Assembly: GCF_964194025.1 (NCBI RefSeq)
Contig: NC_134481.1
Coordinates: 38,440,001-38,504,000, forward strand
DNA length: 64,000 nucleotides
DNA from: Convolutriloba macropyga
Taxonomy: Eukaryota
Reading direction: 5' to 3'
Shown: piece after piece, positions 9,001-53,588 of the stretch
How positions within the stretch are numbered: the first letter of the stretch is position 1
How the letters are laid out: each line of letters begins with the position of its first letter
Made by a program: the position numbers and the translations under genes
The notes under the pieces: generated by a model
Seen by the model: only the letters and a program-made list of their open reading frames with translations
The model's database searches: none
What the model was told of the DNA's origin: nothing

Positions 9001-12000
9001 ACCATTGGATTTGCAGTTTTTTTACATGCTAATCATTTGACTAGCAAATTCCTACAAATTAACCGTTCAACCTGCAAGTTCCAACAAGTTAACCATTCGA
9101 GTTGTACGTTCATACAAGTTAACCATTCGAATTGGCAAATTCTATCAAGTTAACTGTACAACTTGGCAATTTCTTACAAGTTAACCCTTCATTTTGCAAG
9201 TTCCTACAAATTAACCATTGGACTTGCAAGTTCTTACAATCAACCATTCAACTTGCAATTTTTTACAAGTTACCCAATCGTTTTGCAGTTTTTACTTGTT
9301 AACCATTCTACTTGCAAGTTGATACAAGTAAAACATTCCAGTTGACGTTCCAACAAGTTACCCATTTGACATGCAAATTCTTAAAAGTAAACTATTCGAC
9401 TTGCAAGTTCTTACAAAATAACCAATCGACCTGCAATTGCATACAATTGAACCATTCAACTTGGCAACTTCTCACAACCTAACCATCGAATTGCAAGTTC
9501 TTTCAAGTTATCCCTTCGGATTGCAATTTTTTGCAAATTAACCATTCGACTTGCAATTTCTTAGAAGTTAACCATTCGAGTTGCAGGTTTTTACATTTTA
9601 ATCCTTCGACTAAAAAGTTCTTACAAATTAACCATTCGACTTGCAATTTCCTACAAGTTAACCATTCGAGTTGAAGGTTCTTACAAGTTAACCATTTGAC
9701 TTGGCAATTTCTTACAAGTTAACGAAACAACTTGGTATTTTCCTAAAAATTAACCCTTCAGTTTGCAAGTTCTTACAAATTGACTATTCGACTTGCAAGT
9801 TCTTACAAGCTAACCATTCGACTTGCATTGTCTTGCATGTTAATCATTCGACTTGTAAATTTTCACAGGTTAACTTATCGACTTATAAATCCTTAAAAAC
9901 CAATAAATCGACTTGCAAGTTTTTACTAATTAGCCATTCGACTAGCAAGTTCTTACAATTTGACCATTCGATTTGCATGTTCTTTCAAGTTCGCCACTCG
10001 ACCAGCAATTTCCTTCAAACTGACCATTTGACTTTTAATTTCTTACAAGTTAACCATTCAACTTGCAAGTTCATACAAGTTAACCATTCGAAGTGGCAGT
10101 TTCTTACACGTTAACAGTTCGAGTTGCAAGTTCTTACAAGTTAACCGTTCAACTTGCACGTTCTTGCATGTTAATCACTCGAATTTGCAGTTTCTTACAA
10201 GTTATCCATTCGATTTGCACGTTCTTACAAGTTAACCATTCGACTCGCAATTTTTGCAAATTAGCCATTGGACTTGCAGTTTTTTTACATGTCAATCTTT
10301 CGAATAGCAAGTTCCTACGAATTAAACGTTCAACTTGCAAGTTCCTATATGTTAACCATTCGACTTGGCAATTTCGTACAAGTTAACATTTCGACTTGCA
10401 AGTTGTTACAAGTTAACCATTCGACTTTCAAGTCTTTACAAGTTAATCATTCTACCCGCAGGTTCTTACCAGTTAACTATTCAACTCGCAAGTTTTTGCA
10501 AATTAACCATTGGACTTGCTGTTTTTTACATGCTAATCTTTCGACTAGCAAGTTCCTACAAATTAAATGTTCAACTTGCAAGTTCCTATATGTTAACCAT
10601 TCGACTTGGCAATTTCTTACAAGTTAACATTTCGACTTGCAAGTTGTTACAAGTTAACCATTCGACTTGCCAATTTCTTACAAGTCAACATTTCGACTTG
10701 CAAGTTGTTACAAGTTAACCATTCGACTTGCAGGTTTTTACATGTTGACCAATCGACAAGCAATTTCTTACAAATTAACTATTCGACTTGCAGGTTTTCA
10801 AATGTTAACCATTCGACTTGCAAGTATCTACAAGTTAACCCTTCAACTTGCAAGTTCTTACAAATTAACCAGTGGACTTGCAAGTTCTTACAATGAACCA
10901 TTCAACTTGCAATTTCTTACAAACCACCCAATCGCCTTGCAGGTCTTTACTTGTTAACCATTCTACTTGCAAATTAGAGAAGTAAACCATTCCAGTTGTC
11001 ATTCTAACAAGTTAAACAATCGACATACAAACTCTTAAAAGTAAACAATTTGACTTGCAAGTTCTTACAAAATAACCAATGGACCTGCAAGAGCTTACAG
11101 TTGAACCATTCAACTTGTCAACTTCTCAAAACCTAACCATCGACTTGCAAGTTCTTACAAGTTAACCCTTCGGATTGCAAATTTTTACAAATTAACCAAA
11201 CGACTTGCAATTTCTTACAATAATTCATTCAACTTGCAAGTTCTTACAAGTTAACCATTCGAGTTGCAGGTTTCTTCTTGTTAAAACTTCGACTAAAAAG
11301 TTCTTACAAATTAACCATTCAACTTGCAAGTTCCTACAGATTAGTAATTTGAGTTGCAGGTTATTACATTCGACTTGCATTGTCTTGCATGTTAATCATT
11401 CGACTTCTAATTTTTCACAGGTTAACTTATCGACTTGTAAATCCTTAAAAAACAACAAATCGACTTGCAAGTTCTTACTAATTAGCCATTCGACTAGCAA
11501 ATTCTTACAAATTGACCATTCGTCCTGCAAGTTCTTACAAGTTAATCATTCTACCTGCAGGATCTCTTATCAGTTAACTATTCGACTCGTAAGCTCTTAC
11601 AAGTTAACCATTCGACTGGCAGTTTGTTTACATGTTAACCATTCGACTAGCAAGTTCCTACAAATTAACCCTTCAACTTGCAAGCTCCTACAAGTTAACC
11701 ATTCGACTTGCAAGCTCTTACAAGTTAACCATTCGACTTGCAGTTTGTTTACAAATTAACCATTCGACTAGCAAGTTCTTACAATTTAACTACTCAACTT
11801 GCAGGTTTTCACATGTTAAAAATTCGACTTGCAAGTATCTACAATTTAATCATTCGACTTGCACGTTCTTACAAGCTAACCATGTGTCTTGGCAATCTCT
11901 TACACGTTAGCCATTCGACCAGCAAGTTCTTACAAATTGACCATTCGAAATGCAAGTTCTTACAAACTAACTATTCATCTTGCAAGTTCTTACAATTTAG

Positions 12001-15000
12001 CCACTCTACCAGCAAGTTTCTACAAACTTACCAATCGACATGTAAGTTCTTACAAGTTAACTTTTCAACATGCACGTTCTTACAAACTAACCATTCGACT
12101 TGACAATTTCTTACACGTTAACCATTCGACTTGCAAGTTTCTACAAGTTAACCATTCGACTTTCAAGTCTTTACAAGTTAACCATTCGACCTGTAGTTAT
12201 TTACCCGCTAACTATTCGACTCGCAAGTTTTTGCAAATTAATCATTGGACTTGCTGGTTTTTTACATGCTAATCTTTCGACTAGCAAGTTCCTACAAATT
12301 AAAACTTCAAATTGCAAGTTCCTACATGATAACCATTCGACTTGGCAATTTCTTACAAGTCAACATTTCGACTTGCAAGGTGTTACAAGTTAACCATTCG
12401 ACTTGCAGGTTTTTACATGTTAACCAATCGACTAGCAAGTTCTTACAAATTAACTATTCGACTTGCAGGTTTTCAAATGTTAACCATTCGACTTGCAAGT
12501 ATCTAAAAGTTAACCCTTCAACTTGCAAGTTCTTACAAATTAACCAGTGGACTTGCAAGTTCTTGCAATGAACCATTCAACTTGCAATTTCTTACAAACT
12601 ACCCAATCGACTTGCAGGTTTTCAGTTGTTAACCATTCTACTTGCAAGTTAGAGAAGTAAACCATTCCAGTTGACATTCTAACAAGTTAAACAATCGACA
12701 TACAAATTCTTAAAAGTAAACAATTCGACCTGCAATTTCTCACAAAATAACCAATGGACCTGCAAGAGCTTACAGTTGAACCATTCAACTTGTCAACTTC
12801 TCAAAACCTAACCATCGACTTGCAAGTTCTTACAAGTTAACCCTTCGGATTGCAAATTTTTACAAATTAACCAAACGACTTGCAATTTCTTACAAAAATT
12901 CATTCAACTTGCAAGTTCTTACAAGTTAACCATCCGAGTTGCAGGTTTTTTCATGTTAAACCTTCGACTAAAAAGTTCTTACAAATTAACCATTCGACTT
13001 GCAAATTCCTACAGACTAGTAATTCGAGTTGCAGGTTATTACAAGTTAACCATTTGACTTGGCAGTTTCTTACAAGTTAACCATACTACTTGGCACTTTC
13101 TTACAAGTTAACGCTTCAACGTGCAAGTTCTTACAAAATGACCATTCGACTTGTAAGTTCTTACAAACTAACCATTCGACTTGCATTTTCTTGCATGTTA
13201 ATCATTCGACTTGCAAATTTTCACAGGTTAACTTATCGACTTGCAAATCCTTAAAAACCAATAAATCGACTTGCAAGTTCTTAATAATTAGCCATTCGAC
13301 CTGCAAGTTCTTACAAGTTAATCATTCTACCTGCAGGTTCTTATCAGTTAACCATTCGACTCGCAAGCTCTTACAAGTTAACCATTCGACTTGCAGTTTG
13401 TTTACATGTTAACCATTCGACTAGCAAGTTCTTACAAATTAACTACTCAACTTGCAGGTTTTCACTTAATAAAAATTCGATTTGCAAGTTTTACAATTTA
13501 GTCATTCGACTTGCACGTTCTTACAAGCTAACCATGTGTCTTGGCATTCTCTTACACGTTAGCCATTTGACCAGCAAGTTCTTACAAATTGACCATTCGA
13601 AATGCAAGTTCTTACAAACTAACTATTCAACTTGCAAGTTCTTCCAATTTAGCCAATCTGCCAGCAAGTTTCTACAAACTAACCATTCGACATGTAAGTT
13701 CTTACAAGTTAACCTTTAAACATGCACGTTCTTACAAACTAACCATTCGACTTGACAATTTCTTACACGTTAACCATTTGACTTGCAAGTTCCTACAAGT
13801 TAACCATTCGCCTTGCAAATTTTCACTGGTTAATCTACCGGCTCGCAAATTCCTAAAAACTATGAAATCGCCTCGTAGGTAATTTTACAAATTGATCATT
13901 CGAATTGCAGGTTTTAGCAAGTTAAAGTTTCGATTAGCACGTTTTTACAAGTTAATCATTCGACTAGCCAAATCTTACAAGTTTACCATTTGACTTGCAA
14001 CATCTCAAAGGTTAACCATTCGACTTGCAAATTCTTACATGTTAACCATTCGAATTGCATGTTTTTTCAAATCAGCCATTCGACCAGCAAGTTCCTTCAA
14101 ACTGACCATTTGACTTTTAATTTCTTACAAATTAACCATTAAATTTGCAAGTGCTTACAGTTGCACCATTCAACCTAGCAATTTCTCACAAATTAAGCAT
14201 CAGTTTGCAAGTTCTTACAAGTTAACCATTCGGCTTGCATTTTCCTACAAGATAACCATTCGACTTGCAAGTTTTTACAAGTTAACAATTTGACTTTCAA
14301 GTCTTTACAAGTTAACCATTCGACCTGCAGGTTTTTACCAGTTAACAATTCGACTCGCAATTTTTCACAAAAAACCATTGGACTTGCAAGTTCTTTCAAT
14401 GAAACAGTCGACTTGCAATTTCCTAAAAGTTACCCAATCGACATGCAGGTTTTTACTTGTTAACCATTCGACTTGCAGGTTATTACCAGTAAACCATTCG
14501 AGTTGCACGTTCTAACAAGTTAACCATTCGACTTGCAAGTTCTTACAAAATAATCAATCGACCTGCAAGTGCTTAAAATTGAACCATTCAACTTTGCAAT
14601 TTCTCACAAACTAACCATCGACTTGCAATTTCTTACAAATTTACCATTCGAGTTGCAATTTTTTACAATAAACCATTCGACTTGCAAGTTCGTACCAGTT
14701 AACCATTCGAGTTGCAGGTTTTTACATGTTAACCATTCGACTTGCAGGTTATTACCAGTAAACCATTCGAGTTGCACGTTCTAACAAGTTACCCAATCGA
14801 CTTGCAGGTTTTTACTTGTTAACCATTCGACTTGCAGGTTATTACCAGTAAACCATTCGAGTTGCACGTTCTAACAAGTTAACCATTCGACTTGCAAGTT
14901 CTTACAAAATAATCAATCGACCTGCAAGTGCTTAAAATTGAACCATTCAACTTTGCAATTTCTCACAAACTAACCATCGACTTGCAATTTCTTACAAATT

Positions 15001-15215
15001 TACCATTCGAGTTGCAGGTTTTTACGTGTTAACCATTCGACTAGCAAGTTTTTACAAATTAACCATTCGACTTGCAATTTTTTACAATAAACCATTCGAC
15101 TTGCAAGTTCGTACCAGTTAACCATTCGAGTTGCAGGTTTTTACATGTTAACCATTCGACTAGCAAGTTCTTACAAATTAACCATTCGAGTTGCAACTTC
15201 TTACAAGTTAACCAT
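1..15215. repeat. 30-bp satellite array (consensus about CAAGTTAACCATTCGACTTGCAAGTTCTTA), ~500 monomers, with higher-order repeats; continues off the left edge
   Basis: Continuous 30-nt periodicity. The ORF track shows 10-aa periodic peptides (QVNHSTCKFL, LTIRLASSYK). Near-identical blocks recur at 2041/2923/3804 (882/881-bp spacing). The array ends abruptly at about 15215. Confidence 0.98.
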
Positions 15216-16005
15216 TTCGGTCTCGACCCGGATTGCGCATTACGTTTCCAGAACATTTTTTCTAATGACCAGGTGTCACTCGGTGTTTCAATGCCCAATC
15301 GCCGTCGAGTTTGCCGATGTCGGTAATTGCACTCCTTCTTTTTTGACAGTTTTTGGGGTTCGTTGAATTTTCTTTTACCGGACGTCCTCGAACGTGATGA
15401 ATGAATTTCTGGTTGTTTTTTCAAGAACACCTAAGCTTAGATAGTAATTTGTAGTAAAAGTAGTTGGTGATGAATGCGGTTAAATTTAGATAATTTTAGT
15501 CACAATTTAGGTAAAGAAAAAAAAATGTTATAATTTTTTTCACCCCTTTCACCGTTTCTGCCATCTTTAATTGCATAACTTTGTTTGTTTTCTGTATGTT
15601 CAAAAACAATGTTCATAATGAATATTTATAACGCATTATAAACGCTGATTTCAGCGGTTGCATTATGTGTAAGTCGCTGCTAAAATTAAGCCATTTTACA
15701 TATTTTCTGTGGCTTGTAGCTCTGACTCGAAGATTCATTAATAATAATACATTGTTTACTGGTGTCTTTACAGAATAAATCGAACACTTACACAGTTGAT
15801 CAATACATATAAAAAAGAGCACCAGAAAGATCGCCATTAGACCATAAAGTCCGTTTTCAGGCGTCTCATAGTCGGAAGAGAAATTTCGTGTTATTTATTT
15901 CAAAGTTATTTAGTGGAAATCAAAATTAAAGTGATAGCGAGAAAAAAAGGAAGATTACTATTAAAATGATTTCAAATTGGTCATAAATTTTGTTGAATAA
16001 AGTTT

Positions 16006-34050: not shown

Positions 34051-34406
34051 TAGGTACTTCCTTTTACCCCCCCCCCCCTGTCTTGCTTAACTATTACTAC
34101 TAATGTCATATATATTGTTGGTAATATTCTGATCAGTTTCAAAATACATTTAGTGAACTCCATTATGAGTCTAGCTACCTTCGCTTAATGACATCTGAAA
34201 TTGACGCACGTTTGGTTTTTCTGACCAAATCTTGAAAAAATAGAATAAAATTCGTCAACCCTTATCCTTTAAACGCATTCAAGTCCATTCATGGGAAAAA
34301 TTCCAATAACACTTCTAAACAAACAATTGAACATTTTAATTCTCTATTATATAAAAAAGAGGAAAAGGCTTTCCTCTCTCGAAAAGAGCTGAATTTGATA
34401 ACCAAC

Positions 34407-35270
34407 CTTCACGACATGCCTGAATCCTCGTTGAATCCGATGTTGATCCTGCAACCTTGCTCTTACAACTTGGTATGGATAGGTCAAGACAACAGCAAAT
34501 AATTTCGAAGACGCTGAAAAGAGCAAATACCACTTGGTGGCCAACTTGACTGAATTCGTATCAACGTCGAACTTCCTCGAGTACCACTTTTTCATTTCTT
34601 CATAAGCCATGAATTGAAAGGCTCCATGTGAGACACCGAGCAAGCCCGCTGAAAACCCACTATAAAGACCTCGTATTCCTTCCAACTTGTAGGTTTTAAC
34701 CAGACAATCAACAAAACCTCTGTATAAAACTTGACTTCTCGGTTTTAATAAGCTTTCACTGGCTGCGTGATTTGATTCATATTGCAAACAAAGTCTAGTT
34801 TTTGTCACCCAGATTGGGTTAGTCAAAGCCAGAGTAACAGCTCCGGATTGTGCGGCAGATAACATGTGCATTCCAGGTGATAAACTTTTAACACTTGTTC
34901 CGTTCTTATTTTTGCCGTAAATTTTCTTGGACGCATTGTAAAAGTAAAAATAAAGTCCCCATGAAGCGCTAGCACCTATGATGTTAGGAGTGACTCCTTG
35001 ATAGAACCCGAAAACACCTCCGCCCGAATAAATAGACTTGCAAATGTGGCGAATGCTTTCATAGTAAGGTCTGTTCTTGAAGCCATCGTTGACAGCCAGT
35101 CTTATTTTGACAATGTCGAGAGGATGGCAACATAAAGTGGACACGACGCCTCCCGTGACACCAGAGACCAAGTCCACTGCTTTGAAGTTGAGCAGGAAAT
35201 CACCCAATGCATATTTAGGGACCTGCATCAAGTCCACTATCTGAAATGGCACCTTATCACACAGTTTCAT
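34407..35270 (-). CDS. SLC25A32: Mitochondrial folate/FAD carrier (SLC25 family), first coding exon; C-terminal exon not found in window
   Basis: Three carrier signatures (HPLDIVKIRLAV, NPIWVTKTRLCLQY, YPYQVVRARLQDQH) plus GFYQGVTPN, WGLYFYFYN and GVSHGAFQFMAYEEMK. Homology stops at the likely donor AAG|GTTGGT (34407/34406). Confidence 0.9.
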
Positions 35271-41223: not shown

Positions 41224-44200
41224 TCACAAGTAGAGTTTCAGAAACTTCAAATCAGTTTGATTAACCGACGATTCACTTTCCAGTTTTCGTTTGATAGATT
41301 TAGATTTTGAGGCTTGCAATCTGCGATCATTAACTGTTGGTATAAACTGTTTTGTTAGTGTATAGTATTTAGAGGCAGAGCAAGTGAAAGTCTTCTGCGA
41401 CAAAGTTTCCTTTCCCAATCTTCTACCATAAAATTGATTCAATTCCGTCCTATTGCATCGGAAGATATCTACATTATCCAGCTCCACAACTTGATCACCT
41501 GCACAACTTTCGTCATTCAAAGCGTAGAACAAAGTCTTGAGCCAATTTTGCTCTTCCAGTTCGTCGTAAGCTAGATTTCCACTTTCTGAACGCAAAACTT
41601 TCCAATTAATGTTGCCTGACTTTACGTTCTCTTTGTTGTCCAGGCACCATTGCTGTTTCTGGCACAGCTGGATTTTATCCAAAGATTGAAAATTGGAGAA
41701 GAAAGTGAGACATTGGGATGTCAAATGGTGGTTGCAGCACAGTGATAGATACCTTAGCCTGTCTAAGCATCCTAAAAACACACAACTAAAATTTGTTGAA
41801 ACAAATCATTTTTTTCAAAATTCAGCTTAAAAGAAGTATTTCGAATGCTATTAACCATTTAGTGGCCTGACAAAAACTTAAAACGCCAGAACACTATTCA
41901 CAATTTAGTAGAATATTTCTTTAAAAAATAGAGAATTAAAGTAGAATATTTCTATTGATAACAATCTGCTGATCGGGGCTACTTGGTTCAGACATAGGTT
42001 TGCTCAACCTACCAGATCTAAACAGTCGAAAGAAGTCGCATACAAGTTAAGCGAGTTGGTAAAAAAAGAAAAGAGCAAAAGTGCGCTATTGTTGACGCCA
42101 GTGCAAAGCCAGGAAAGAAAGGTGATTCCCACGAAATGTTGAGGTCTAATCGTCTTAGAAAAAACGACAGCATCGAAATTTTTCACGTTTGAACAATCTG
42201 AAAATTATGGTTACGTGGTTGTAATAAGTTTGGTCATAGGTATACGTGCAGCCCACCAGTTGTCGGACGAAGTTTTACCGTATCATCATCATGTCTTCTT
42301 TTCGTTCAGATACAACAGCTACTTAAACCATGTGAGAAGTAAAACAGGTACATGAACTGCATCTCATGAGGAATCAATCGTTGCTAAATGAGTATAAAAC
42401 AGAAAGTCTTCTTGAGTTGCCGCGAAACTTAATTCATCTGAACGGAAAAAAAACGGCGCGGCCCTGGCTACCAAAACCATCAATACTGCTCGCGGAAAAG
42501 TCATTGTTGCTCGAGAAATCAATGGAATATTAGAAAAGGACAGATGAGAATGTGCTTCAATTAGTGAATTACTGATTGAAACATAAACCGACAAATGTCG
42601 GAAGAATTGCTCTTGAACGACAGGTGATGCGAACCACTGACCTCTCGATCCATGGCCACCCTCACTAACCACTGCGCTACAAGTCAGTTAATTCTGCTAC
42701 GCTGCAACCGATTTTATATTAGCAACTTCGGAGCAATAGAGATCACTCAAAAATGATGAACGAAAGCGTGAAAAAGTCACTTGAGAAGTCAAAGAATGTT
42801 CTAGAAGAAAAGCGCAAAATTGTCAAGCGAAAACTTTGCATAAAAAAGACACACGTTTACAATAATTGCTATGAACTGCGTTCAAGAGCAATTAAAAACC
42901 TACTGCTGTTCTTAAATATTAACTGCATGGCGAGGGGGTCCGCAAGCAATTCAATTAAAACCTGAAGCTAAAATTTGAGAATGGTGCTCTAGCAGTCGTG
43001 AAACTTTCATGGAAAAATCTTTGCAGTGCATTTAATGTCTCCTGTCTGAGAATGGATAACATGATGCAAAGGAATCAAAACACAAGCAGGCAGGCAACAG
43101 TTTGGACAAATCATTAAGATGAGGCTTTCAATAAAACGATAAAAACAGGAGAAGTAGAGAAAAAGAGGAGGCTTTGCTTGAGTCGGACTGGAGAAAAGCA
43201 GAGAAGTTTGGCTCGAAAATAATGGGTTTTGAGAAAAACTAATAGGGCCAATTAAAGGTCTTCACTTTTTCAATTAGCCTAATTGCTGTCATAAACTTAT
43301 TAAACAGTTTCAGAGAATGTCTGATGTCGGCGAACTTGCCAATGGGTTGACTATCCCCAGTGACCAGATGCCAATAATTTCCCAACCTGGTACAGCAAGT
43401 ACTGAGAATGAGCCCCCACTCCCCGATCTGCGTTTTCACGATCAAACACCGTTATCCAAGCCTCGACAACAAAAGACCTCGACTTCTGCTAGGATCTTCT
43501 CCAATTGAGGAAGATAATTCAGACGACGCAAGAATACAAAAGTTTGTTGACGAAGCCATCCAAAAAAAACATCAAGCATGCTGCCAAATATTGTGGCATC
43601 ACTGCAGACAGAAATCAAAGACACTTTATCCAATGCTTTAACGAAAGCCGTGTCAGACATGAAGGCAGAAATAATGGGGGAATTGAGGGAGGATATAGTT
43701 TTCGTTGACAAGAAATCTGAACTGAAGACATTGTGTGAAACAGAACAACTGGAAACCTATAATAGACGCGATAACCTTAAAATTCTTGGAGTCAATGAAC
43801 ACCTGCATGAGGACGGCCACTTAGAAACACCATTAGAAACAATTGAAAAAGTTCTCAACGTTTCGAACATCATTGAATCAAAAGTAACTGCGAACGACAT
43901 CTCCATTGCTCATCGCCTTGGCACGAAAAGTACTGCTCGTCCAATAATAGTCAAGTTTTCGCGACGCATTGCTAAAGTAAACATGCTGACAAGTAAGAAG
44001 AAACTCAAAGACAACCCCCTGGACAACAACGTACGGATCATTGAGGATATCAGTCGATCACGAGTCAAGTTCCTCAATCTAATGCAAACCGATGCCCGAA
44101 ATGCTTCCGCATGGACCAAAGAAGGAACAGTATTCTTCACGGAGCCCAACAGTCAGCAAATCAACAAGTTCAACAACCTCTATGATGGAGGAATCCTACT

Positions 44201-47200
44201 CAATTATAGCTTGGATGATGTTTTGTACTGTTTTCGGAACAACTAACATAAATAATTCAAAAAATGTTACTGCTGCAGTTCCGAATGTGCCTTTAAAAAC
44301 CAAAGTTTCTGTTATGCATCTAAATGTACGATCTCTAAAGCCGCACTATGAGAAACTGGAAGCGTTAATTTTGAGTCTTGAGTCTCCACCAGACGTAATA
44401 TGTCTGACTGAAACTTGGGTAACTGCAAATGAGGATCCAAAATGTTATTTGTTACCGGGATATAGACAGTAGTTCGTTTTTCGAAACCGATAATCAACAG
44501 GTGGAGGAGTAATGATGCAATTACATGAAAATTGCGTGCTACTAGGCGAGAAAGATAGTCCATTTGAAGAGAGCATTTTATCAGACATTTCAATTCATGG
44601 GCATACATACTCCTTTCTGACTCTATACAACAAACCAAGTTCAAATAAACAACTGTTTCTTAATCAATTAGCCCAATTCCTTGAGCAAAACGCTTCTCAT
44701 TCAACTCCTATGATCATATGTGGAGATACTAACATCGATGTTCTCAAAAATAATACACTTATCAAAAACTATCTCAATATAATAACGGCTAATGGTTTTA
44801 ATTGTTTCGCTGATGAACCCACCAGAGAGACAGAAAACACCTCCACCTGCCCGGATCATTTTATTTTCCAAAATATAAATCTGACACGTTTTTCCGTATT
44901 GAAAGAAGAGTATATCTCTGATCATTACCCGGTAATAATAGAATGGGATTCAAGTCAACTCGAAAAGCCCGAGATCTCATTTCGTGACACGTCCTTCTTA
45001 AAAAACAAATCATTAAATGATGAATTTCTTCAAAGACTGGGCGAAAGCCTTAGTGCTTGTAATGAAAAAATTTTCACCGAAGAGGAGCCTGGCTCTGCTT
45101 TCAATAAATTCAAAAACATCTTCAAAAATACTTAAATCTTTTTGCACCTATCAAGAGCTTTAACAAGCCAGCATGTAGAACTCCAAAATGGTTTACCAAC
45201 ACCCTTAAAATTCTGAGAGCAAAAAGAAATCGCGCGCACCTGAAACAAACAAAATCCGCATAACGAAGAATACCTAAAAAAAATTTAGAGAATTACGTGA
45301 CAACTTTGAACCAGCTGTTAAAAAATCTAAAAAGAAGTTTTACTGGGATAAGTTCAAGGCATGTATTGGAGACTCAAGACAAACTTACAAACTTTTAAAT
45401 GATTTACGAGGTTCAAGTAGCGACGCTCAAACTGTCCCTGCTCTCACATCGTGTTTGCTGAGGCAGTCGGAGCCTACCGCTGAGGATATAGCAGATAAGT
45501 TTAACCATTACTTTACATCGATCGCCAAAGACATTAAAGCTGCCCTGCCTGAAACAGCTCTACCAGTCTTACCTTCTGTGGAAAAGTCGATGTTTCTATA
45601 TGAAGTGTCAAATGCTGAAGTTAAACTCATAATTGATCAGCTGGATAACAAATCATCTTCTGCTGATGATAATGTCAACAACTTAATCGTAAAAGCATCT
45701 GCGCCTGTGGTAATTCCTTACCTAACGCATCTGATAAACAAATCGTTCTCACAAGGAATCTTCCCATCAGAACAAACAAAAGCCAAAATCCTCCCATTTC
45801 ATAAAGATGGAGCAAAGACCGATGAATCAAACTATAGCCCAATTTCACTTTTGTTAACCTGGAGCAAAAAATATGAAAGCGCTATGTACAACAGAAAGTA
45901 TCAGTATTTAGAAAAATTTTCACTCCTACATTCCAAACAATTCGACTTCCGATCAAAACATAGTGCAATCGATGCAATTGTTCAATTGACCGAGCGTGCA
46001 AAACTACTTCATGGTAAAAATTATTATAGATTTTTTCTTGACCTTAAGAAAGCTTTTGATACCCTTGATCATTCTATACTTCTTTATAAATTAGAAACCT
46101 ACGGCATCCGTGGCATTTGTCTTAAATGGTTTCGCTCCTACCTAACAAATCGAAAACAGCGCGTTGAAGTTAATGGTGTTTTCTCTGGATGGCGAAACAT
46201 ATCCTGTGTGTCCCCCAGGGCTCTATATTAGGGCCCCTCCTCTTCTTAGTTTATATCAACGACTTACCCCGCTCATGTCCATCAGCCGGGGTGCTTCTTT
46301 CTGCCGACGATACAAACCTAACTGCTATTAACTGCCAAATAAACAACTTACAAAACGATCTTGCTAGTCTCAATAATTGGCTGAATGCCAATAAACTTGT
46401 TCTTAATATGTCTAAAACAGTTCAACTGAACATTAACATTAACGCTTCCAGTTCGTTCTCACTTAATAACTGTGTAGTTCAGGTAAAACCTGTATGCAAG
46501 TAATTGGGCACTTACATTGATAATAAGTTCTCCTTTCAATCGCATATTGATTTTGTTAAAGTGAGACTCGGTAAACAAAGTGGTATTATATCGAAGCTAC
46601 GACACTATGTACCTAGAGCTAACTAACTACTATCGTACAACCGTTGTACCAATAGTTCAGTATGGCCTTTTAGTTTACGGTTGCTGTAGTTATAAATCAT
46701 TAGAACCCTTATATATCCTTCAAAAGAAAATTTTGAAGTTCATTTACTTCCGCAAAAGACGCGAAAACTGTGATATATTTCAAAGCAATTATTTATTAAC
46801 AATATATGAGCTACACCTCTATGAACTTCTCAAATTTGTTCTTATATCGCTTAAACAACAACATTGTCCAACTTTTTAAAACGATTTATTTAAGTTTTCA
46901 GAATCTAACCCAAATACACGCCGTACATCAGCTGGATTATTAGCAGAACCATTCTAAAAAAGACAAATTGACCGATTTTCTGTTAGATATTGTGCGACCA
47001 AACTTTTCAAGACAAATTGACCGATTTTCTGTTAGATATTGTGCAACCAAACTTTTCAACAAGCAAAAAACCTGTGGCGTCATTCCACACATATTAGATC
47101 TGCCCTTTTCAAAAATTTCACATTTGTATGATAATTGGGAAGACATATATATACTACAAAACCGTGAATTGATTAAACATATTTTTGATATTTAGCTTCC

Positions 47201-49213
47201 CAATTTTTTCAATACCTGTGGCTGCATGCTACAGGACCTTCAATTTTGGGCCCTGATTCTAGCCTGAAAGTTTGACCCCTCTAGCTCTTCTAGTTTTCGA
47301 GATATCGCATTTTTTTCATTTTTTGAGAAAAATTTTAAGGACTTAGAAAATTTTTGAAAAAAAAAATCAGATTTTTTTTCTCTCGTTAACAGCAGGCTAT
47401 GCAGTGTGCTTATCAATCGATACATGTGAGCACTCCGCTTTCTGTCAACAAAAAAAATTCTCTCGACCAATTTTGGCATAGCTGACCAATTTTTTTTTCT
47501 TTCATTTTCCTTTAATTGATCAAATTGATATTGCATTAAGCCACCAGGGCATAAGTCTTGTGGACTGTATTGTCCCGTTATCTGTCCTTTCCGGGTCTCA
47601 TTTGATATTTAAATTTATAACTTTGTCATTCATTTAATATATTACTTGAACCCAGATAAATAAATTCTTTCTTTCTTTCACTTGAACAGAAAGGCGATCT
47701 AATTCAGAATCCTGCACGAAATGTAGAAAAACGAACCAAAGTGAATGGAACATTAAAAGCTTATCAAAAGTCAGTGGTCTGTCCAAAAAGATTTTGCCTT
47801 ATTAAAACCGTTAAGAGTGCACGAGGAAACAAAGCTTTTTGGATCAAGTTCCAAAAAGCCAAATTGAAACAGCTTGCAAGAGGTGTTTCATCTCAACATG
47901 TCTAAGAAAAATTGTAAGGAAAAGTAAGGGTAAAAAGTACACTAGGAAAAAACAACAGTAGGAAACAGATGACAATAAATCGAATGTTCTCATGTAGTGT
48001 AAATAAAAAGTGAAAAAATGGAGAATGTTGATTTTTAACATACCTTAGAAAGTTTTTCAGTTCTCAGGAATATTGTAGACTGTGGAGGGCAGATAACGTT
48101 TTGCGGACTATAGCATATACAGTACAACAATAGCTACAAACATTGACCTTGCGCAAAAGTTTGGAGACAAATCTTGAAAAGCGTACATCATCATACATTC
48201 AAAGGGCTCGAGCAACGCAGTATTATTGAAAACAAAAATAACAAATTTGACATTTTGAATTTGAAAAGGCGGATGAAATGATTTTGTCACATTGGAAGAA
48301 TGAACTGCAAGTCTTCCAGCAAAAAACTAATTGCAATCCTATCAGACAAATTACTTAACCAGAAAAGCTGTCGGAGGAAAACGAAGACATGGCTGCAATA
48401 ACTCCGACAACGCATACAGTATAGAAAGCCGAAAGACACTTAAGAGAATTTAATTTCATTTGAGAGCAATTATAAATATTCGCGTGTCGAAAATTAGCCT
48501 GATGCATTTAATTTGCAGCTGTTTATAATCTTGTATCCATTAATAAAGCAGTACAAATTAAAAAATATCCAATTATAATACCCGTAGCTGAAAATTGACG
48601 TACCAGATGGTATTTATGGATATTTGACAATCTTCACACTTAAAGGAAAGTTTTCAGCTAGTTGAGCTATAAAAAGGGATATAAAAAGGCGACAAATTTA
48701 CGAAGTTAAAATTACGATAAACGTACCTTTGTACATTCGCTGACGGCTTGTCATTATTCTGAGATCTTCATTATGCAAATAACAACCATCCAATTGCAAT
48801 ACCTCCAATAAACAAAAGTCACTTCCGATTTTCAGCAAATTATCTTTGCTCAGATCCAACCCTGATAGTGATAATTTAGTTATTTGGCTGAACACATGTG
48901 AGGGATAGCTGAAAAATGTTTTGAATAAACTTGTTTGACTTTTAGTCAGCCTGATTTCTGATAGCAATTGAGGACAAGCTTCAACAGCTAAATATGCATA
49001 TTTCCTTTTCATATCTTCGCTTAGCTGTTCACTCGTAAATATTTCTTCAACTATCATTTCGGGCAGTCCATAAAATGAGTACACCAGGTGTAAATTTGAA
49101 AGAATGAAATCGAAAATTATCACTCGCAGCATCTTTGGTTGGTGACCTTTTGGTACACAAGATTGACTTAAAATTTGAGAAAAATCGCGATTTGAATCGG
49201 GTTTCCACTTCAT
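41224..49213 (-). CDS. LRRC42: Leucine-rich repeat-containing protein 42; exons 49213-48727 and 41771-41224 (344 aa), intron 48726-41772
   Basis: Donor AAAG|GTACGT and acceptor TTTTTAG|GA join in phase to give [29 protein letters not shown]. This matches the recalled LRRC42 pattern (RKMTAPVRVMKRGLENL..LDLSCN). [20 protein letters not shown] and QFYGRR also match. Confidence 0.82.
42575..42905 (-). repeat. Dispersed repeat with an embedded tRNA-like segment (copy 2; tRNA-like part 42685-42614)
   Basis: Minus strand GACTTGTAGCGCAGTGGTTAGTGAGGGTGGCCATGGATCGAGAGGTCAGTGGTTCGCATCACC has A and B boxes but a poor acceptor stem. Confidence 0.7.
43317..44246 (+). pseudogene. LINE ORF1 (coiled coil + RRM + C-terminal domain), frameshifted near the N-terminus
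   Basis: ORF pieces 43317-43508, 43408-43641 and 43578-44246. Confidence 0.85.
44215..47195 (+). pseudogene. LINE ORF2 (APE-RT) with stops, frameshifts and a 49-bp internal tandem duplication (46961-47058)
   Basis: Collinear fragments 44092-44472, 44512-45135, 45455-46231, 46189-46503, 46580-46879 and 46968-47195. Confidence 0.9.
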
Positions 49214-49471
49214 TTCAACCTAGAACAATCACTCTGAATTCGAACTTTTTTATCGAATTTAGCAAAATTCATTGCTCAATTTATATCAAGTTTTGATATA
49301 AATAATAATAAAGTTCTGATTAACATTTAAGCAGTGAACAAGTATTTGAAAAAGTTTCTTTAATTTGAACTATATTAATCAAATCAATTTAATTATTAAC
49401 TACGGCAATATGGTACCTACAACTTATTCATATAATCTACCACTTTACTCATTTCTACGACCATTTTGTTA

Positions 49472-50398
49472 TTACTTTTTGCGTTTCTTCGTAGATCTGA
49501 GAGAAACGCCTGTTCCTTGAAATGGTTTGAAATCAGGAACATCGCTTTCATCGTTTTTGTTCTTTTCTTCAGCGCCTGTACTCGTCTTGCTTCTTATAAA
49601 ATTTATTTTGCCCGGCTTGTAATCGTAATTTGGAATTCCACGTTCAATCACTTTTGAGGGATCCAGTAATTTTGGATTAGCTTCCGTGTTTTTCTTTTCC
49701 CCGTCCAACCGATTTCCTCTTCCTTGGAATGCATGGAAAAGTTTTGCTTGTTCCGCTTTCTTAATAGCGTCAATCCTTTCTTGTTCATTGAGCTGTTCCT
49801 TCTGTTCACGTGTTAGCACTTCCGGTTCTTTGTAGCCAACCGGTTTTTCAAATTCGACGTTCATATCGCACTTAATAATCGAAACAGCTGGCGGTGGCTC
49901 AACTGCTACAACTAGCAACTCATAAACTCGATCATTATAATGAATTGCAATAACATCATTGCAAGTCAGACAAGCAAAATTTCTCAAACTGTTTTCAAGA
50001 ACTGCCTTTGGATTAGTTATGTCCAAGAAATCGGCACTTTGCGGCTGGAACTTCCCAAATGTTGCAGAAGGAAGCGAAACAGATTCAATATCTACAAGTT
50101 CACCCTCCTCTAGAAGCAAATTTTTCATCATCCAGTACGGAATGTAGCATTTTCCTTCTTCCGCGATAAACTCTAACACGCCACAATTTGTTACTCGACT
50201 TTTTCTTTTGTTCTGCAGTTTAAAAAGCATCGGGTAGTCAATATTCAAGCGTGACAGAAGCTCCAAAGCAGTTGGAGGCAGAATAATTTTGCCACCCTCT
50301 TCAACTTCCGGTCTCTCGCTTCCTGGCATCATCGACACGGAAAAGCATTTGTACTGTGTTTTGAATGTTCTTCCAAGGGCAGGATAAAAATGAAACAT
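49472..50398 (-). CDS. UFD1: Ubiquitin fusion degradation protein 1 (p97/Cdc48 cofactor), intronless CDS, 308 aa from the ATG at 50398
   Basis: GGKIILPPTALELLSRLNIDYPMLFKL, CGVLEFIAEEG, PYWMM, QPQSADFLDITNPKAVLENSLRNFACLT, and two SHP-like boxes (FQGRGNRL, FQGTGVSL). Confidence 0.97.
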   Translation of the reverse strand: MFHFYPALGRTFKTQYKCFSVSMMPGSERPEVEEGGKIILPPTALELLSRLNIDYPMLFKLQNKRKSRVTNCGVLEFIAEEGKCYIPYWMMKNLLLEEGELVDIESVSLPSATFGKFQPQSADFLDITNPKAVLENSLRNFACLTCNDVIAIHYNDRVYELLVVAVEPPPAVSIIKCDMNVEFEKPVGYKEPEVLTREQKEQLNEQERIDAIKKAEQAKLFHAFQGRGNRLDGEKKNTEANPKLLDPSKVIERGIPNYDYKPGKINFIRSKTSTGAEEKNKNDESDVPDFKPFQGTGVSLRSTKKRKK

Positions 50399-50983
50399 TT
50401 TCACTGAACTGAAAACAATCTCGATGAAAAAATCTCGATGAACGGTTTAAAGTCAATCATGACTTTTTCCTTTTCTCCCCCCCCCCCCCCACCCGTACGT
50501 CATGCACTTTCCAATTTCAGAGCAAGTGTCATTAAAGAAACGGAAAAAGGGGTATGATCCACCCAATGGACGGAACAGCAGTGAGCCCCCACTATGAAAC
50601 ATCACAGCAGCGTATTTAAATTTACCGCAAAAAACGCACAGTACTTTGAACTTACAGCATCATGCTAGTCTCTCGGAGCCACGTCAAAAGGTCAAAACAT
50701 TACTTTACTAATCATGTGTCCAGCCTCCCCTCCCGCACAACAACATTACAATTATCGTCAACCTCAGTAACACGTTTAATACCACGAAAGCCTCTGAGAC
50801 AGATAATTGCAATGCTTAGGAGCGCCTTCGTTCGAATGTATGTAATTGCGTCCGAGTATTTGTCGTCTTTTCTTTCGGGAATTTTTGTTGCTAGGTACTA
50901 GAAATAAGAAATATGGCACTTGCTTCAGGCGGTGCAAAAAATTTGCACCTAATAAGCTTGGGGAGGCACAAACAGAAAATGAG

Positions 50984-51112
50984 TCTTTCCCATTATAGCC
51001 CCCCTCAACTTAGTGGTCAGATAACCTATAGCCCCTCCAATCATGGTAATTCCACCATAATGGGGGCTATAATTTCATTGGGGGGGGGGGGGGGGGGCTA
51101 TAATGGGAAAGA
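50984..51112. mobile_element. MITE-like element with ~21-bp terminal inverted repeats (copy 1)
   Basis: TCTTTCCCATTATAGCCCCCC ... GGGGGGCTATAATGGGAAAGA, with internal copies of the TATAGCCCCC motif. Confidence 0.75.
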
Positions 51113-52074
51113 TCCCAGAAAAGATCCGAAATCAAACCATCACAGCGATAACACCGATCGCAGTCTCTTCATTCGGTGCTATAACTCAGCCGCTACCAAT
51201 TTTAAAATAACATAAGAAACCTACATCCATGTTTCAAAGGAAAACAACACAATACCGTATGGATGCAGAATTGTAAATAATTAACTTACGAAAATTTTAA
51301 CTCCTGAGGATGCAAGTTATTGTGAAAAACGTTCGAGTGATTTAACAAGTTTTTATCGACTTTTAACCTTTTTTTGATCAAAAGCTACACATAACAAAAA
51401 AACTTTGAATGACTTGCTCACAGAGAAACACCCGATTCCTTCCAAATTAAACCTAACTTACATAGTTGACGAAAACAATTTTGAGTCAATCCCTTACAAC
51501 CCCGCAATCTTCAAAAATATGGGCGCGTTGGCAGCTTTGAAAACAAATGGCAGCCATGTACCGCCCTGTTTAATGCAAAAAACGGTAGCTAAAACGGCTA
51601 ATCACCAAGCAATTAAAAAAAAGTATCTGAAAAATTTTTTGAACCGTTATTACATATGCACACAAATAACGTGGAAAAAAACTCCGGTATTCAGCTATTT
51701 GCGTAGGAGAACTTCTTCGTCAGATAGTAGGCAAATGCATCATCAAGCGTATAGAAAGCGACCTACGTTTCTAGGCGGTAAAAGAATTTGGCCGAAAAAA
51801 AAATTGCGCGATTGAACACGCTAATCAATCTCTACGCTCGCGAAATGAAAAATTCGAAAAATAAGCTGTTCTACTAATTGACGCAAAAAGGCCTTTTGCG
51901 GCCTCAACCATGAATTGGCCGTTAAAAAATCAAAAGAAATTGTCCCATTGATATTCAATCACGTATGATTTATGGCCTGTTTTATGGCTATGGATGGAGT
52001 AGCCAATTTTCCCTAGATCAAGCTTGTCTAGAGCACGCATGTGTCGAGAAAAAAGTACGCAGACAACAACAGCT

Positions 52075-53588
52075 TAGCAGAAAGTTTGATTGACTTACTC
52101 TTATTTTTCAAACAACTCACTGTACCTGGTGGCAATTTTCACTACAACATGAAAGCCCCTGAGTTTTAATTATCAGTGAAAGGTGCTTCAAAGAACAAAG
52201 ATTTGAGGTTGTCGTTTGAGGTGATGGCAGTTGAAATTGTTGACAGCTACCGCTTTCCAAGATCTTCAATAGCAGAAAGTTTGATTCACTTACTCTTCTT
52301 TTTCAAACAACTCACTGTACATGGTGGCAATTTTGACTAAAACATGAAAGCCCCGGAACCTTAAATATTAGTGAACGGTGCTTCAAAGAACAAAGATTTG
52401 AGGTTGTCGTTTGAGGTGATGGCAGTTGAAATTGTTGACAGCTACCGCTTTCCAAGATCTTCAATAGCAGAAAGTTTGATGCACTTACTCTTCTTTTTCA
52501 AACAACTCACTGTACATGGTGGCAATTTTGACTAAAACATGAAAGCCCCGGAACCTTAAATATTAGTGAACGGTGCTTCAAAGAAAAAAGTTTTGAGGTT
52601 GTTGTTTGAGGTGATGGCAGTTGAAATTGTTGAAAGCTACCGCTTTCCAAGATCTTCAACAGGCACGTAAGAATACCTAGGTGAACTTCTAAAGCATTCA
52701 AGACCGTAGCAGAACGAGACCTCTAAGGCATTCAAGGCTAGAAAATGTGCCAATTTGTTTTATAAATTAGGATAATGGGCAAAATCAACCACTAAAAACG
52801 CTAACGCATGTCTCAAGAAAACGTGCAACAACAACTAAATTTAGTATCTTGGAGAATGTCAAAATGTCGGAATCTGTGCGTGGACGCGGAAGCGAACATC
52901 TAAACCCACGACCTACCATTGGTTTTCGACTCAACGATTGCTCAGTCCTCGCAGTGATTTTACCGTGAGGGCGAACTCAAGAACGGTGCTTCAAAGAACA
53001 AAGATTTGAGGTTGTCGTTTGAGGTGATGGCAGTTGAAATTGTTGACAGCTACCGCTTTCCAAGATCTTCAATAGCAGAAAGTTTGATGCACTTACTCTT
53101 CTTTTTCAAACAACTCACTGTACATGGTGGCAATTTTGACTAAAACATGAAAGCCCCGGAACCTTAAATATTAGTGAACGGTGCTTCAAAGAAAAAAGTT
53201 TTGAGGTTGTTGTTTGAGGTGATGGCAGTTGAAATTGTTGAAAGCTACCGCTTTCCAAGATCTTCAACAGGCACGTAAGAATACCTAGGTGAACTTCTAA
53301 AGCATTCAAGACCGTAGCAGAACGAGACCTCTAAGGCATTCAAGGCTAGAAAATGTGCCAATTTGTTTTATAAATTAGGATAATGGGCAAAATCAACCAC
53401 TAAAAACGCTAACGCATGTCTCAAGAAAACGTGCAACAACAACTAAATTTAGTATCTTGGAGAATGTCAAAATGTCGGAATCTGTGCGTGGACGCGGAAG
53501 CGAACATCTAAACCCACGACCTACCATTGGTTTTCGACTCAACGATTGCTCAGTCCTCGCAGTGATTTTACCGTGAGGGCGAACTCAA
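52075..53588 (+). repeat. Nested tandem duplications inside the CRE RT: 195 bp x3 (52075-52659) and 608 bp x2 (52373-52980 / 52981-53588)
   Basis: TAGCAGAAAGTTTGAT at 52075, 52270 and 52465. Identical ORFs 52507-52701 and 53115-53309 are offset by 608. Confidence 0.92.

What the first reader, a model, noticed from the sequence alone, without database searches (positions are those of the whole stretch)
49205..49471. UFD1-LRRC42: operon-like spacing with a trans-splice-like acceptor
Seen: only 258 nt separate the UFD1 stop (49472) from the LRRC42 ATG (49213) on the same strand. In transcript order the spacer has ATTAAA poly(A)-like signals, a U-rich patch (CTTTATTATTTTAT) and GATTGTTCTAG|GTTGAAATG. 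Known: this layout is the intercistronic architecture of SL-trans-spliced operons in nematodes and tunicates. Inference: there is little room for a 3' UTR plus promoter plus 5' UTR intron, so this may be a eukaryotic operon in a lineage where operons may be undescribed.
Basis: partly seen in the sequence, partly recalled or inferred. Interest (0 to 1): 0.75.

Follow-up and report, generated by a model that had tools for sequence, protein, structure and literature searches.

The report
Candidate spliced-leader operon in an acoel
In the acoel worm Convolutriloba macropyga the LRRC42-like gene starts 258 bases behind UFD1 and very probably receives the animal's shared RNA leader just before its start codon, so the pair looks like a two-gene operon, but no RNA data could be reached and a sister species has the two genes 17.5 kb apart.

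Summary
UFD1 is a single exon whose stop ends at 49472. An LRRC42-like gene has its ATG at 49213 on the same strand, 258 nt downstream, with a splice acceptor (cut 49220|49219) 6 nt before the ATG.

The genome is the acoel Convolutriloba macropyga. [quoted passage not shown] This genome holds about 1,250 canonical SL RNA genes.

Comparative evidence:
- An LRRC42-like mRNA of another acoel carries the leader 11 nt before its ATG.
- UFD1 mRNAs of a close relative carry the leader and end 143-150 nt after the stop.
- The tight UFD1-to-LRRC42 spacing (210, 211 and 258 nt) is kept in three lineages and looks ancestral.
- In Symsagittifera roscoffensis the same two genes, in the same order and orientation, lie 17,490 nt apart.

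The ATTAAA motifs and the U-rich patch are no more than chance in 75% A+T sequence.

No RNA of this species could be laid on the locus, so co-transcription is untested.

My odds:
- leader splicing at this site: about 0.8
- operon, including one with an internal promoter: about 0.45
- own promoter in the spacer: about 0.35

I found no paper describing operons in acoels. This scan has noted many similar candidates elsewhere in this genome.

The parts
49472..50398 (-). UFD1 coding sequence, a single exon of 308 aa plus the stop codon
   Evidence: ORF. Pfam UFD1_N1 and UFD1_N2. It is the only intact copy in the genome, and it is intronless in all four related genomes too.
50404..50421 (-). Candidate SL acceptor(s) of UFD1 (TTTTCAG then TTCAG), 10 or 5 nt before the ATG
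   Evidence: Sequence. UFD1 mRNAs of a relative with 90% protein identity carry the leader 5 nt before the ATG (L001-L004).
49214..49471 (-). Spacer of 258 nt between the UFD1 stop and the LRRC42-like ATG. It should hold the UFD1 3' UTR plus either an intercistronic region or a promoter with a short outron.
   Evidence: It is 75% A+T, has no consensus cis donor and no Rfam match. It is not alignable to other species' spacers.
49359..49393 (-). Two ATTAAA hexamers (49393-49388 and 49364-49359), candidate UFD1 poly(A) signals
   Evidence: their number is at chance level. One MAFFT alignment puts the second hexamer opposite the conserved AATGAA block of L005/L033. This is inference only.
49268..49285 (-). 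TATAAA (49285-49280) and AATGAA (49273-49268). These could be alternative poly(A) signals of UFD1 or a TATA-like element for LRRC42.
   Evidence: A second alignment puts AATGAA opposite the proven AATAAA of the relative's UFD1 mRNA; the alignment score is not significant.
49293..49313 (-). T-rich, A/T-only patch
   Evidence: not above chance (P 0.35).
49220..49230 (-). Predicted SL trans-splice acceptor GATTGTTCTAG, cut 49220|49219, 6 nt before the ATG. An alternative CAG acceptor has its cut at 49234|49233.
   Evidence: Orthologues have acceptors 7, 20 and 31 nt before their ATGs. The orthologous mRNA L018 carries the leader plus an 11-nt UTR.
48727..49213 (-). LRRC42-like exon 1, with donor AAAG|GTACGT
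   Evidence: The five relatives found are the acoel-like ones retrieved. Single copy in this genome.
41772..48726 (-). LRRC42-like intron 1 (6,955 nt). It holds an antisense LINE with endonuclease and reverse transcriptase, about 43578-46900 on the plus strand.
   Evidence: tblastn exon mapping, acceptor, Pfam hits for the LINE ORFs.
41224..41771 (-). LRRC42-like exon 2 with the stop codon; the whole protein is 344 aa
   Evidence: Weak LRR_8 hit.

Best explanation
The LRRC42-like pre-mRNA is trimmed by spliced-leader trans-splicing at the AG at 49221-49220, or possibly at the CAG 14 nt upstream. The 38-nt acoel leader, made from about 1,250 SL RNA genes elsewhere in the genome, is joined 6 nt before the ATG.

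The substrate is most likely RNA made by polymerases that started at the UFD1 promoter and read on past the UFD1 poly(A) site. That makes the pair a two-gene SL-resolved operon, possibly a 'hybrid' one with an additional weak internal promoter.

Shown: the layout, the SL RNA genes, the leader on an orthologous LRRC42-like mRNA and on a relative's UFD1 mRNA, and tight spacing in three lineages.

Inferred: use of this acceptor in this species, the position of the UFD1 poly(A) site (25-150 nt before the acceptor), and the shared transcript.
For: - Same strand, 258-nt spacer, unpaired acceptor 6 nt before the first possible ATG, and no cis donor in the spacer.
- There are 1,247 genomic copies of the leader followed by a GTAAG donor, mostly in tandem arrays on chromosome 9. 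The fold is canonical (donor inside stem 1, 3' hairpin, z = -5.8).
- The same leader is published for S. roscoffensis, where 30% of genes are trans-spliced (PMC9911081).
- The metatranscriptome contig L018, an LRRC42-like mRNA of another acoel, starts with the leader followed by 11 nt and the ATG.
- UFD1 mRNAs of a relative with 90% protein identity carry the leader and poly(A) tails 143-150 nt after the stop. If that holds here, only about 100 nt remain.
- The UFD1-to-LRRC42 spacing is 210 and 211 nt in two outgroup species and 258 nt here. The UFD1 tree makes tight spacing ancestral.
- By published operational criteria the pair would count as an operon: less than 250 bp plus SL in the chaetognath P. 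gotoi (PMC12460157), and less than 1 kb repeat-adjusted in M. lignano (PMC8629364).
- No other host gene was recognised for more than 10 kb upstream of UFD1, so UFD1 would be the first cistron.
Against: - No RNA of this species was seen. The four runs that hold the locus are DNA, with contigs running unbroken through intron and spacer.
- In S. roscoffensis the same two genes, in the same order and orientation, are 17,490 nt apart in two assemblies, and the LRRC42-like ORF is intact. There the gene probably has its own promoter, which may be ancestral.
- SL trans-splicing in acoels is common on genes not known to be operonic, so an acceptor alone does not indicate an operon.
- The acceptor is only moderately strong (7 of 12 pyrimidines; chance 5.8%).
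- A TATAAA lies 65 nt upstream of the acceptor.
- A small spacer is also a small target for insertions, so its persistence is weak evidence of constraint.
- The spacer sequence is not conserved between clades.
Confidence: 0.45

Rival explanations
1. LRRC42-like is leader-spliced but independently transcribed. A compact promoter sits in the distal 100-150 nt of the spacer, for example around the TATAAA at 49285-49280. It makes a short outron that is replaced by the leader. The proximity to UFD1 is just tight packing.
For: In S. roscoffensis the gene sits 17.5 kb from UFD1 and keeps an intact ORF, a pyrimidine tract and an AG 7 nt before its ATG. This argues that a promoter close to the gene exists in the family. 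There is a TATAAA 65 nt before the acceptor. About 30% of acoel genes are trans-spliced with no operon reported.
Against: Very little room remains once a UFD1 3' UTR of about 145 nt is allowed. The TATAAA is not unexpected in 75% A+T sequence. No motif is shared with the S. roscoffensis, L005 or L033 upstream regions. Polymerases leaving UFD1 would run straight through such a promoter. In M. lignano repeats are reported to inflate spacers inside operons, so the S. roscoffensis gap is not decisive.
Confidence: 0.35
2. There is no trans-splicing here. LRRC42-like has an ordinary capped transcription start inside the spacer, and the AG before the ATG is a chance match.
For: An equally good and equally close acceptor precedes 5.8% of random ATGs in the window. 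No RNA of this species was seen.
Against: The orthologous mRNA L018 carries the leader. Acceptors with 10 of 12 pyrimidines precede the ATG in L005 and L033 (chance 2-3% each). All three co-oriented host genes in the window have such a site.
Confidence: 0.12
3. The acceptor is used in cis. An unrecognised non-coding 5' exon lies further upstream, in or beyond UFD1, and is spliced to 49219. Alternatively, the true start codon lies elsewhere.
For: The acceptor needs a donor of some kind, and the N-terminal 25 residues are poorly conserved.
Against: There is no GTAAG- or GTRAGT-type donor in the spacer. An in-frame TAG lies just before the ATG. The orthologue's mRNA starts with the leader, not with a genomic exon.
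Confidence: 0.05

Closest known systems
SL trans-splicing in the acoel Symsagittifera roscoffensis (Martinez et al. 2022, PMC9911081)
   Same: The leader sequence is the same: the published 32-mer matches the SL RNA genes found here. The donor is GTAAG. The acceptors lie a few bases before start codons.
   Different: That paper reports 30.2% trans-spliced genes but never mentions operons. In that species this very gene pair is 17.5 kb apart.
Caenorhabditis elegans operons (Blumenthal; distances as summarised in PMC7986045)
   Same: Genes are head to tail, with roughly 100 nt between the upstream poly(A) site and the downstream trans-splice site. The downstream mRNA is capped by a leader. 'Hybrid' operons with internal promoters exist.
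   Different: C. elegans uses a dedicated SL2 and a defined U-rich element. Only one leader family is seen here, and the U-rich patch is at chance level. Nothing is proven at the RNA level.
Single-leader operons of chaetognaths, tunicates and the flatworm Macrostomum lignano (PMC2481426, PMC12460157, PMC8629364)
   Same: One leader serves both monocistronic and operonic genes. Operons are defined by short same-strand spacing plus SL on the downstream gene (less than 250 bp in P. gotoi, a peak near 100 bp in M. lignano). Housekeeping genes, including ubiquitin-pathway genes, are typical members.
   Different: In Ciona and Spadella the intercistronic region is almost absent (0-3 nt). Here 258 nt separate stop and ATG. 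The lineage (Xenacoelomorpha) has no documented operons.

Membership tests
SL trans-spliced gene (acoel leader) | The genome encodes SL RNA genes: leader exon, GT donor, Sm-like single-stranded stretch and 3' hairpin | tested here: met
   1,247 exact copies of the leader 3' end plus GTAAG, in tandem arrays. Gene copies were aligned by eye. The fold has the donor in stem 1 and a 10-bp 3' hairpin, z = -5.8.
SL trans-spliced gene (acoel leader) | An unpaired 3' splice acceptor upstream of the start codon with no cis donor upstream | tested here: met
   TTGTTCTAG|G lies 6 nt before the ATG, and there is no consensus donor in the 258-nt spacer. The chance of such an acceptor is 5.8%.
SL trans-spliced gene (acoel leader) | The mature mRNA carries the leader joined at that acceptor | tested here: inconclusive
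   No RNA run of this species was reachable. The orthologous mRNA L018 from another acoel does carry it. No leader-bearing retrocopy of this gene exists in the genome.
SL-resolved eukaryotic operon | Same-strand genes with a short intercistronic distance | tested here: met
   258 nt from stop to ATG and 252 nt from stop to acceptor. This is within the thresholds used for P. gotoi and M. lignano and above those used for tunicates.
SL-resolved eukaryotic operon | A polycistronic precursor RNA spanning both genes | not testable with these tools
   Only DNA runs held the stretch. The relative's UFD1 contigs end at or 3-9 nt beyond the poly(A) site.
SL-resolved eukaryotic operon | The downstream gene lacks its own promoter | not testable with these tools
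   There are no TSS or chromatin data. The 17.5-kb separation in S. roscoffensis suggests a promoter near the gene may exist.
SL-resolved eukaryotic operon | Linkage and tight spacing conserved among relatives | tested here: inconclusive
   Order and orientation are kept in all four genomes. Spacing is 258, 210 and 211 nt in three of them but 17,490 nt in S. roscoffensis.
UFD1 (ubiquitin fusion degradation 1) | UFD1_N1 and UFD1_N2 domains above Pfam thresholds; orthologues across animals | tested here: met
   Pfam 136 and 113 bits. About 55-60% identity to most of the named animal UFD1 hits.
LRRC42 | Recognisable LRR repeats and sequence similarity to LRRC42 proteins | tested here: inconclusive
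   Pfam LRR hits are below threshold (E about 0.01). A whole-library phmmer search finds only five relatives, all acoel-like. The top feature match in the atlas is the LRRC42 cluster (0.95).

The most novel reading that the evidence does not exclude
UFD1 and the LRRC42-like gene are transcribed as one precursor and separated by leader trans-splicing. This would be one of the first documented operons in Xenacoelomorpha. It would have a nematode-like intercistronic region of roughly 30-150 nt but only one leader type. The S. roscoffensis locus would then show either an operon broken up by a recent tandem-repeat expansion or an operon with a 17-kb spacer.
Probability: 0.4. Interest if true: 0.55.

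Novelty: new member of a known kind. Interest (0 to 1): 0.4.

Why it matters
Spliced-leader operons are known from nematodes, tunicates, flatworms, chaetognaths and a few other groups. How often they arose is debated. Acoels sit at a key position in the animal tree, are known to trans-splice, and have no described operons in the literature I could search. A proven acoel operon would add a lineage to that debate. It would also matter for gene annotation of acoel genomes, where fused or mis-started gene models are likely.

This particular pair is one modest candidate among many in this genome. Its special value is the contrast with S. roscoffensis, which offers a natural test of whether the downstream gene depends on its neighbour.

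Tried and rejected
- RNA evidence: the look-up of sequencing runs listed four runs, and read laying showed they are genomic DNA. One contig runs unbroken from 48200 to 50573 at even depth, with no joints and no loose ends at 49219 or 48727. This says nothing about expression.
- Chaetognath origin: I first suspected it because the relatives' contigs come from marine metatranscriptomes.
- More LRRC42-like transcripts: two metagenome scans, two protein searches and exact look-ups gave only L018 and a genomic contig that matches the window at 99-100% (L007/L032, probably the same species).
- A leader-bearing retrocopy of LRRC42-like that would fix the junction: none found.
- Mapping the UFD1 poly(A) site by aligning the relative's 3' UTR: the scores are within shuffles, and two alignments point to different hexamers.
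- Shared promoter or intercistronic motifs between spacers of different clades: none found. Only the close pair L005/L033 shares a 60-nt block.
- Known RNA families in 47000-52000: nothing found.
- UFD1 as a recent retrocopy: rejected. It is the only intact copy, it is intronless in all four genomes, and it has an acceptor rather than a leader remnant upstream.

Full report
**What is there.** On the minus strand UFD1 is one uninterrupted ORF of 308 aa (50398-49475) with its stop at 49474-49472. Pfam UFD1_N1 and UFD1_N2 match far above threshold. After 258 nt comes the ATG at 49213 of a second gene.
- Its exon 1 runs to 48727 (donor AAAG|GTACGT).
- Its exon 2 is 41771-41224.
- The two exons are separated by a 6,955-nt intron that holds an antisense LINE.
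- The 344-aa product has only sub-threshold LRR hits and only five relatives in a library of 1.8 billion proteins, all acoel-like. Its best feature match in the protein atlas is the LRRC42 cluster. I therefore call it LRRC42-like.
- An in-frame TAG just upstream fixes 49213 as the first ATG.
- The quoted acceptor is exact, with its cut at 49220|49219.

**Whose genome.**
- The nearest named UFD1 proteins are mostly only 55-60% identical.
- Metatranscriptome contigs of a relative with 90% protein identity (L001-L004) begin with a shared tag ahead of a 5-nt UTR.
- A 26-mer of that tag occurs about 2,800 times in this genome and never in the reversed control.
- The tag is not the chaetognath leader. 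It is letter for letter the spliced leader published for the acoel Symsagittifera roscoffensis.
- The assembly size of 1,175.98 Mb identifies Convolutriloba macropyga, as earlier notes of this scan also said.

**The trans-splicing machinery is native.**
- 1,247 copies of the leader's 3' end are followed by GTAAG. Most lie in tandem arrays on chromosome 9.
- The gene copies are near-identical.
- They fold into a typical SL RNA, with the donor inside the first stem and a strong 3' hairpin (z = -5.8).
- The other roughly 1,600 dispersed copies are followed by AG and unrelated sequence. They look like retrocopies of leader-bearing RNAs.

**Is the acceptor real?**
- On its own it is modest, with 7 of 12 pyrimidines. 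5.8% of random ATGs in the window do as well.
- Comparative data lift it. The LRRC42-like mRNA L018 of a more distant acoel starts with the leader, then 11 nt, then the ATG.
- In two other acoel genomes (L005/L006 and L033) acceptors with 10 of 12 pyrimidines lie 20 and 31 nt before the ATG (chance 2-3% each).
- S. roscoffensis has a long pyrimidine tract and an AAG 7 nt before its ATG.
- UFD1 and the mitochondrial-carrier gene further downstream in the window have such sites too.
- The spacer has no consensus cis donor.
- I put leader splicing at this site, or at the CAG 14 nt upstream, at about 0.8.

**Are the other quoted features meaningful?** No. The spacer is 75% A+T. Two A[AT]TAAA hexamers and a 17-nt A/T run are expected in 43% and 35% of shuffles.

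**Where UFD1 ends.** This is unknown here. In the relative, poly(A) tails start 143 and 150 nt after the stop, behind an AATAAA. Alignments to the window's spacer are not significant, and they point either to the second ATTAAA or to AATGAA/TATAAA much closer to the acceptor. The distance from cleavage site to acceptor is somewhere between about 25 and 150 nt.

**Synteny and spacing.**
- UFD1 followed by LRRC42-like on the same strand is found in all four genomes available.
- The stop-to-ATG distance is 258 nt here and in the near-identical contig L007 (99-100% identical, probably the same species), 210 nt in L005/L006 and 211 nt in L033.
- A UFD1 tree places L005 and L033 outside a well-supported group of this species, S. 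roscoffensis and the Tara relative. Tight spacing is therefore the ancestral state by parsimony.
- In S. roscoffensis the two genes are 17,490 nt apart, in the chromosome assembly and in an independent contig alike.
- About 9.6 kb of that gap is four copies of a 2.4-kb unit at 96-97% identity, a recent expansion. The LRRC42-like ORF there is intact (357 aa).
- Between clades the spacers do not align.
- Between the close pair L005 and L033 a 60-nt block in the middle of the spacer is far better kept than its flanks. It is probably the UFD1 poly(A) region.

**Operon or not.**

For:
- The layout meets every operational criterion used in other single-leader animals.
- Room for a promoter is scant.
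- Such spacing is very unusual in a 1.2-Gb, repeat-rich genome unless genes share transcripts.
- It has persisted in three lineages.
- UFD1 has no recognisable host gene for over 10 kb upstream and is itself leader-spliced in a relative, so it fits a first cistron.

Against:
- There is no RNA evidence at all. The only runs holding the locus are DNA.
- S. roscoffensis shows the downstream gene can live 17.5 kb away, which suggests a promoter near the gene. In M. lignano, however, repeats are reported to swell spacers inside operons.
- A small spacer is a small target, so its survival proves little.

I put co-transcription, including a hybrid operon, at about 0.45. I put an independent promoter with a short outron at about 0.35, no trans-splicing at about 0.12 and cis-splicing or a wrong start at about 0.05.

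**Novelty.** SL trans-splicing in acoels is published. I found no paper that describes operons or polycistronic mRNAs in acoels or Xenacoelomorpha, and Marletaz et al. list acoel operons as '?'. This scan has already flagged many similar candidates elsewhere in this genome, none with a proven shared transcript. This pair is one more candidate, weakened somewhat by the S. roscoffensis gap. The public RNA-seq of this species would settle it quickly.

Noticed in passing
whole genome; examples L008-L017: About 1,600 dispersed copies of the leader are not followed by the GTAAG donor. Most of the ten copies inspected end in ...AAATAG and run on into unrelated sequence. Two of them (L012, L014) continue into the same repeated sequence. 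They look like retrocopies of leader-bearing mRNAs or of a leader-spliced mobile element.
   Followed up: partly
window 4-15216: A 15-kb satellite of about 505 copies of a 30-nt unit (70% matches) with strong strand asymmetry (GC skew about -0.28).
   Followed up: partly
window 50463-50643: Just upstream of UFD1 there is a poly-G run whose length differs between runs (1 or 3 extra letters at 50476). Next to it, at 50550-50643, is a very high-copy repeat (summed contig depth 3,000-5,000 against about 50 nearby).
   Followed up: no
window 52075-52659: Three copies of a 195-nt tandem repeat at 95% identity, about 1.7 kb upstream of UFD1.
   Followed up: no
window 34347-35270 (-): A mitochondrial-carrier gene (Pfam Mito_carr, 1e-49) has an acceptor abutting its ATG (TTTCACAG|ATG). 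It lies 5.9 kb downstream of LRRC42-like on the same strand. S. roscoffensis keeps the same order at 8.4 kb (L022).
   Followed up: partly
L005:10905-10970 and L033:9825-9885: A block of about 60 nt in the UFD1-LRRC42 spacer is about 95% identical between two related acoels, while the sequence on either side has diverged. It contains UGUA motifs and an AATGAA and may be the UFD1 poly(A) region.
   Followed up: partly
L024:10928-20927 with L022:1-10000 (S. roscoffensis): The 17.5-kb gap between UFD1 and LRRC42-like holds four tandem copies of a 2.4-kb unit at 96-97% identity.
   Followed up: partly
L033:15678-20570: Minus-strand ORFs with DNA_pol_B_2 and rve (integrase) domains lie downstream of the LRRC42-like gene in another acoel. 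This is the gene set of a Polinton/Maverick-type element.
   Followed up: no
G000:C1:34228564-34228743: A decayed fragment of UFD1 (55% identity over 62 residues, three stops) lies on another chromosome.
   Followed up: no
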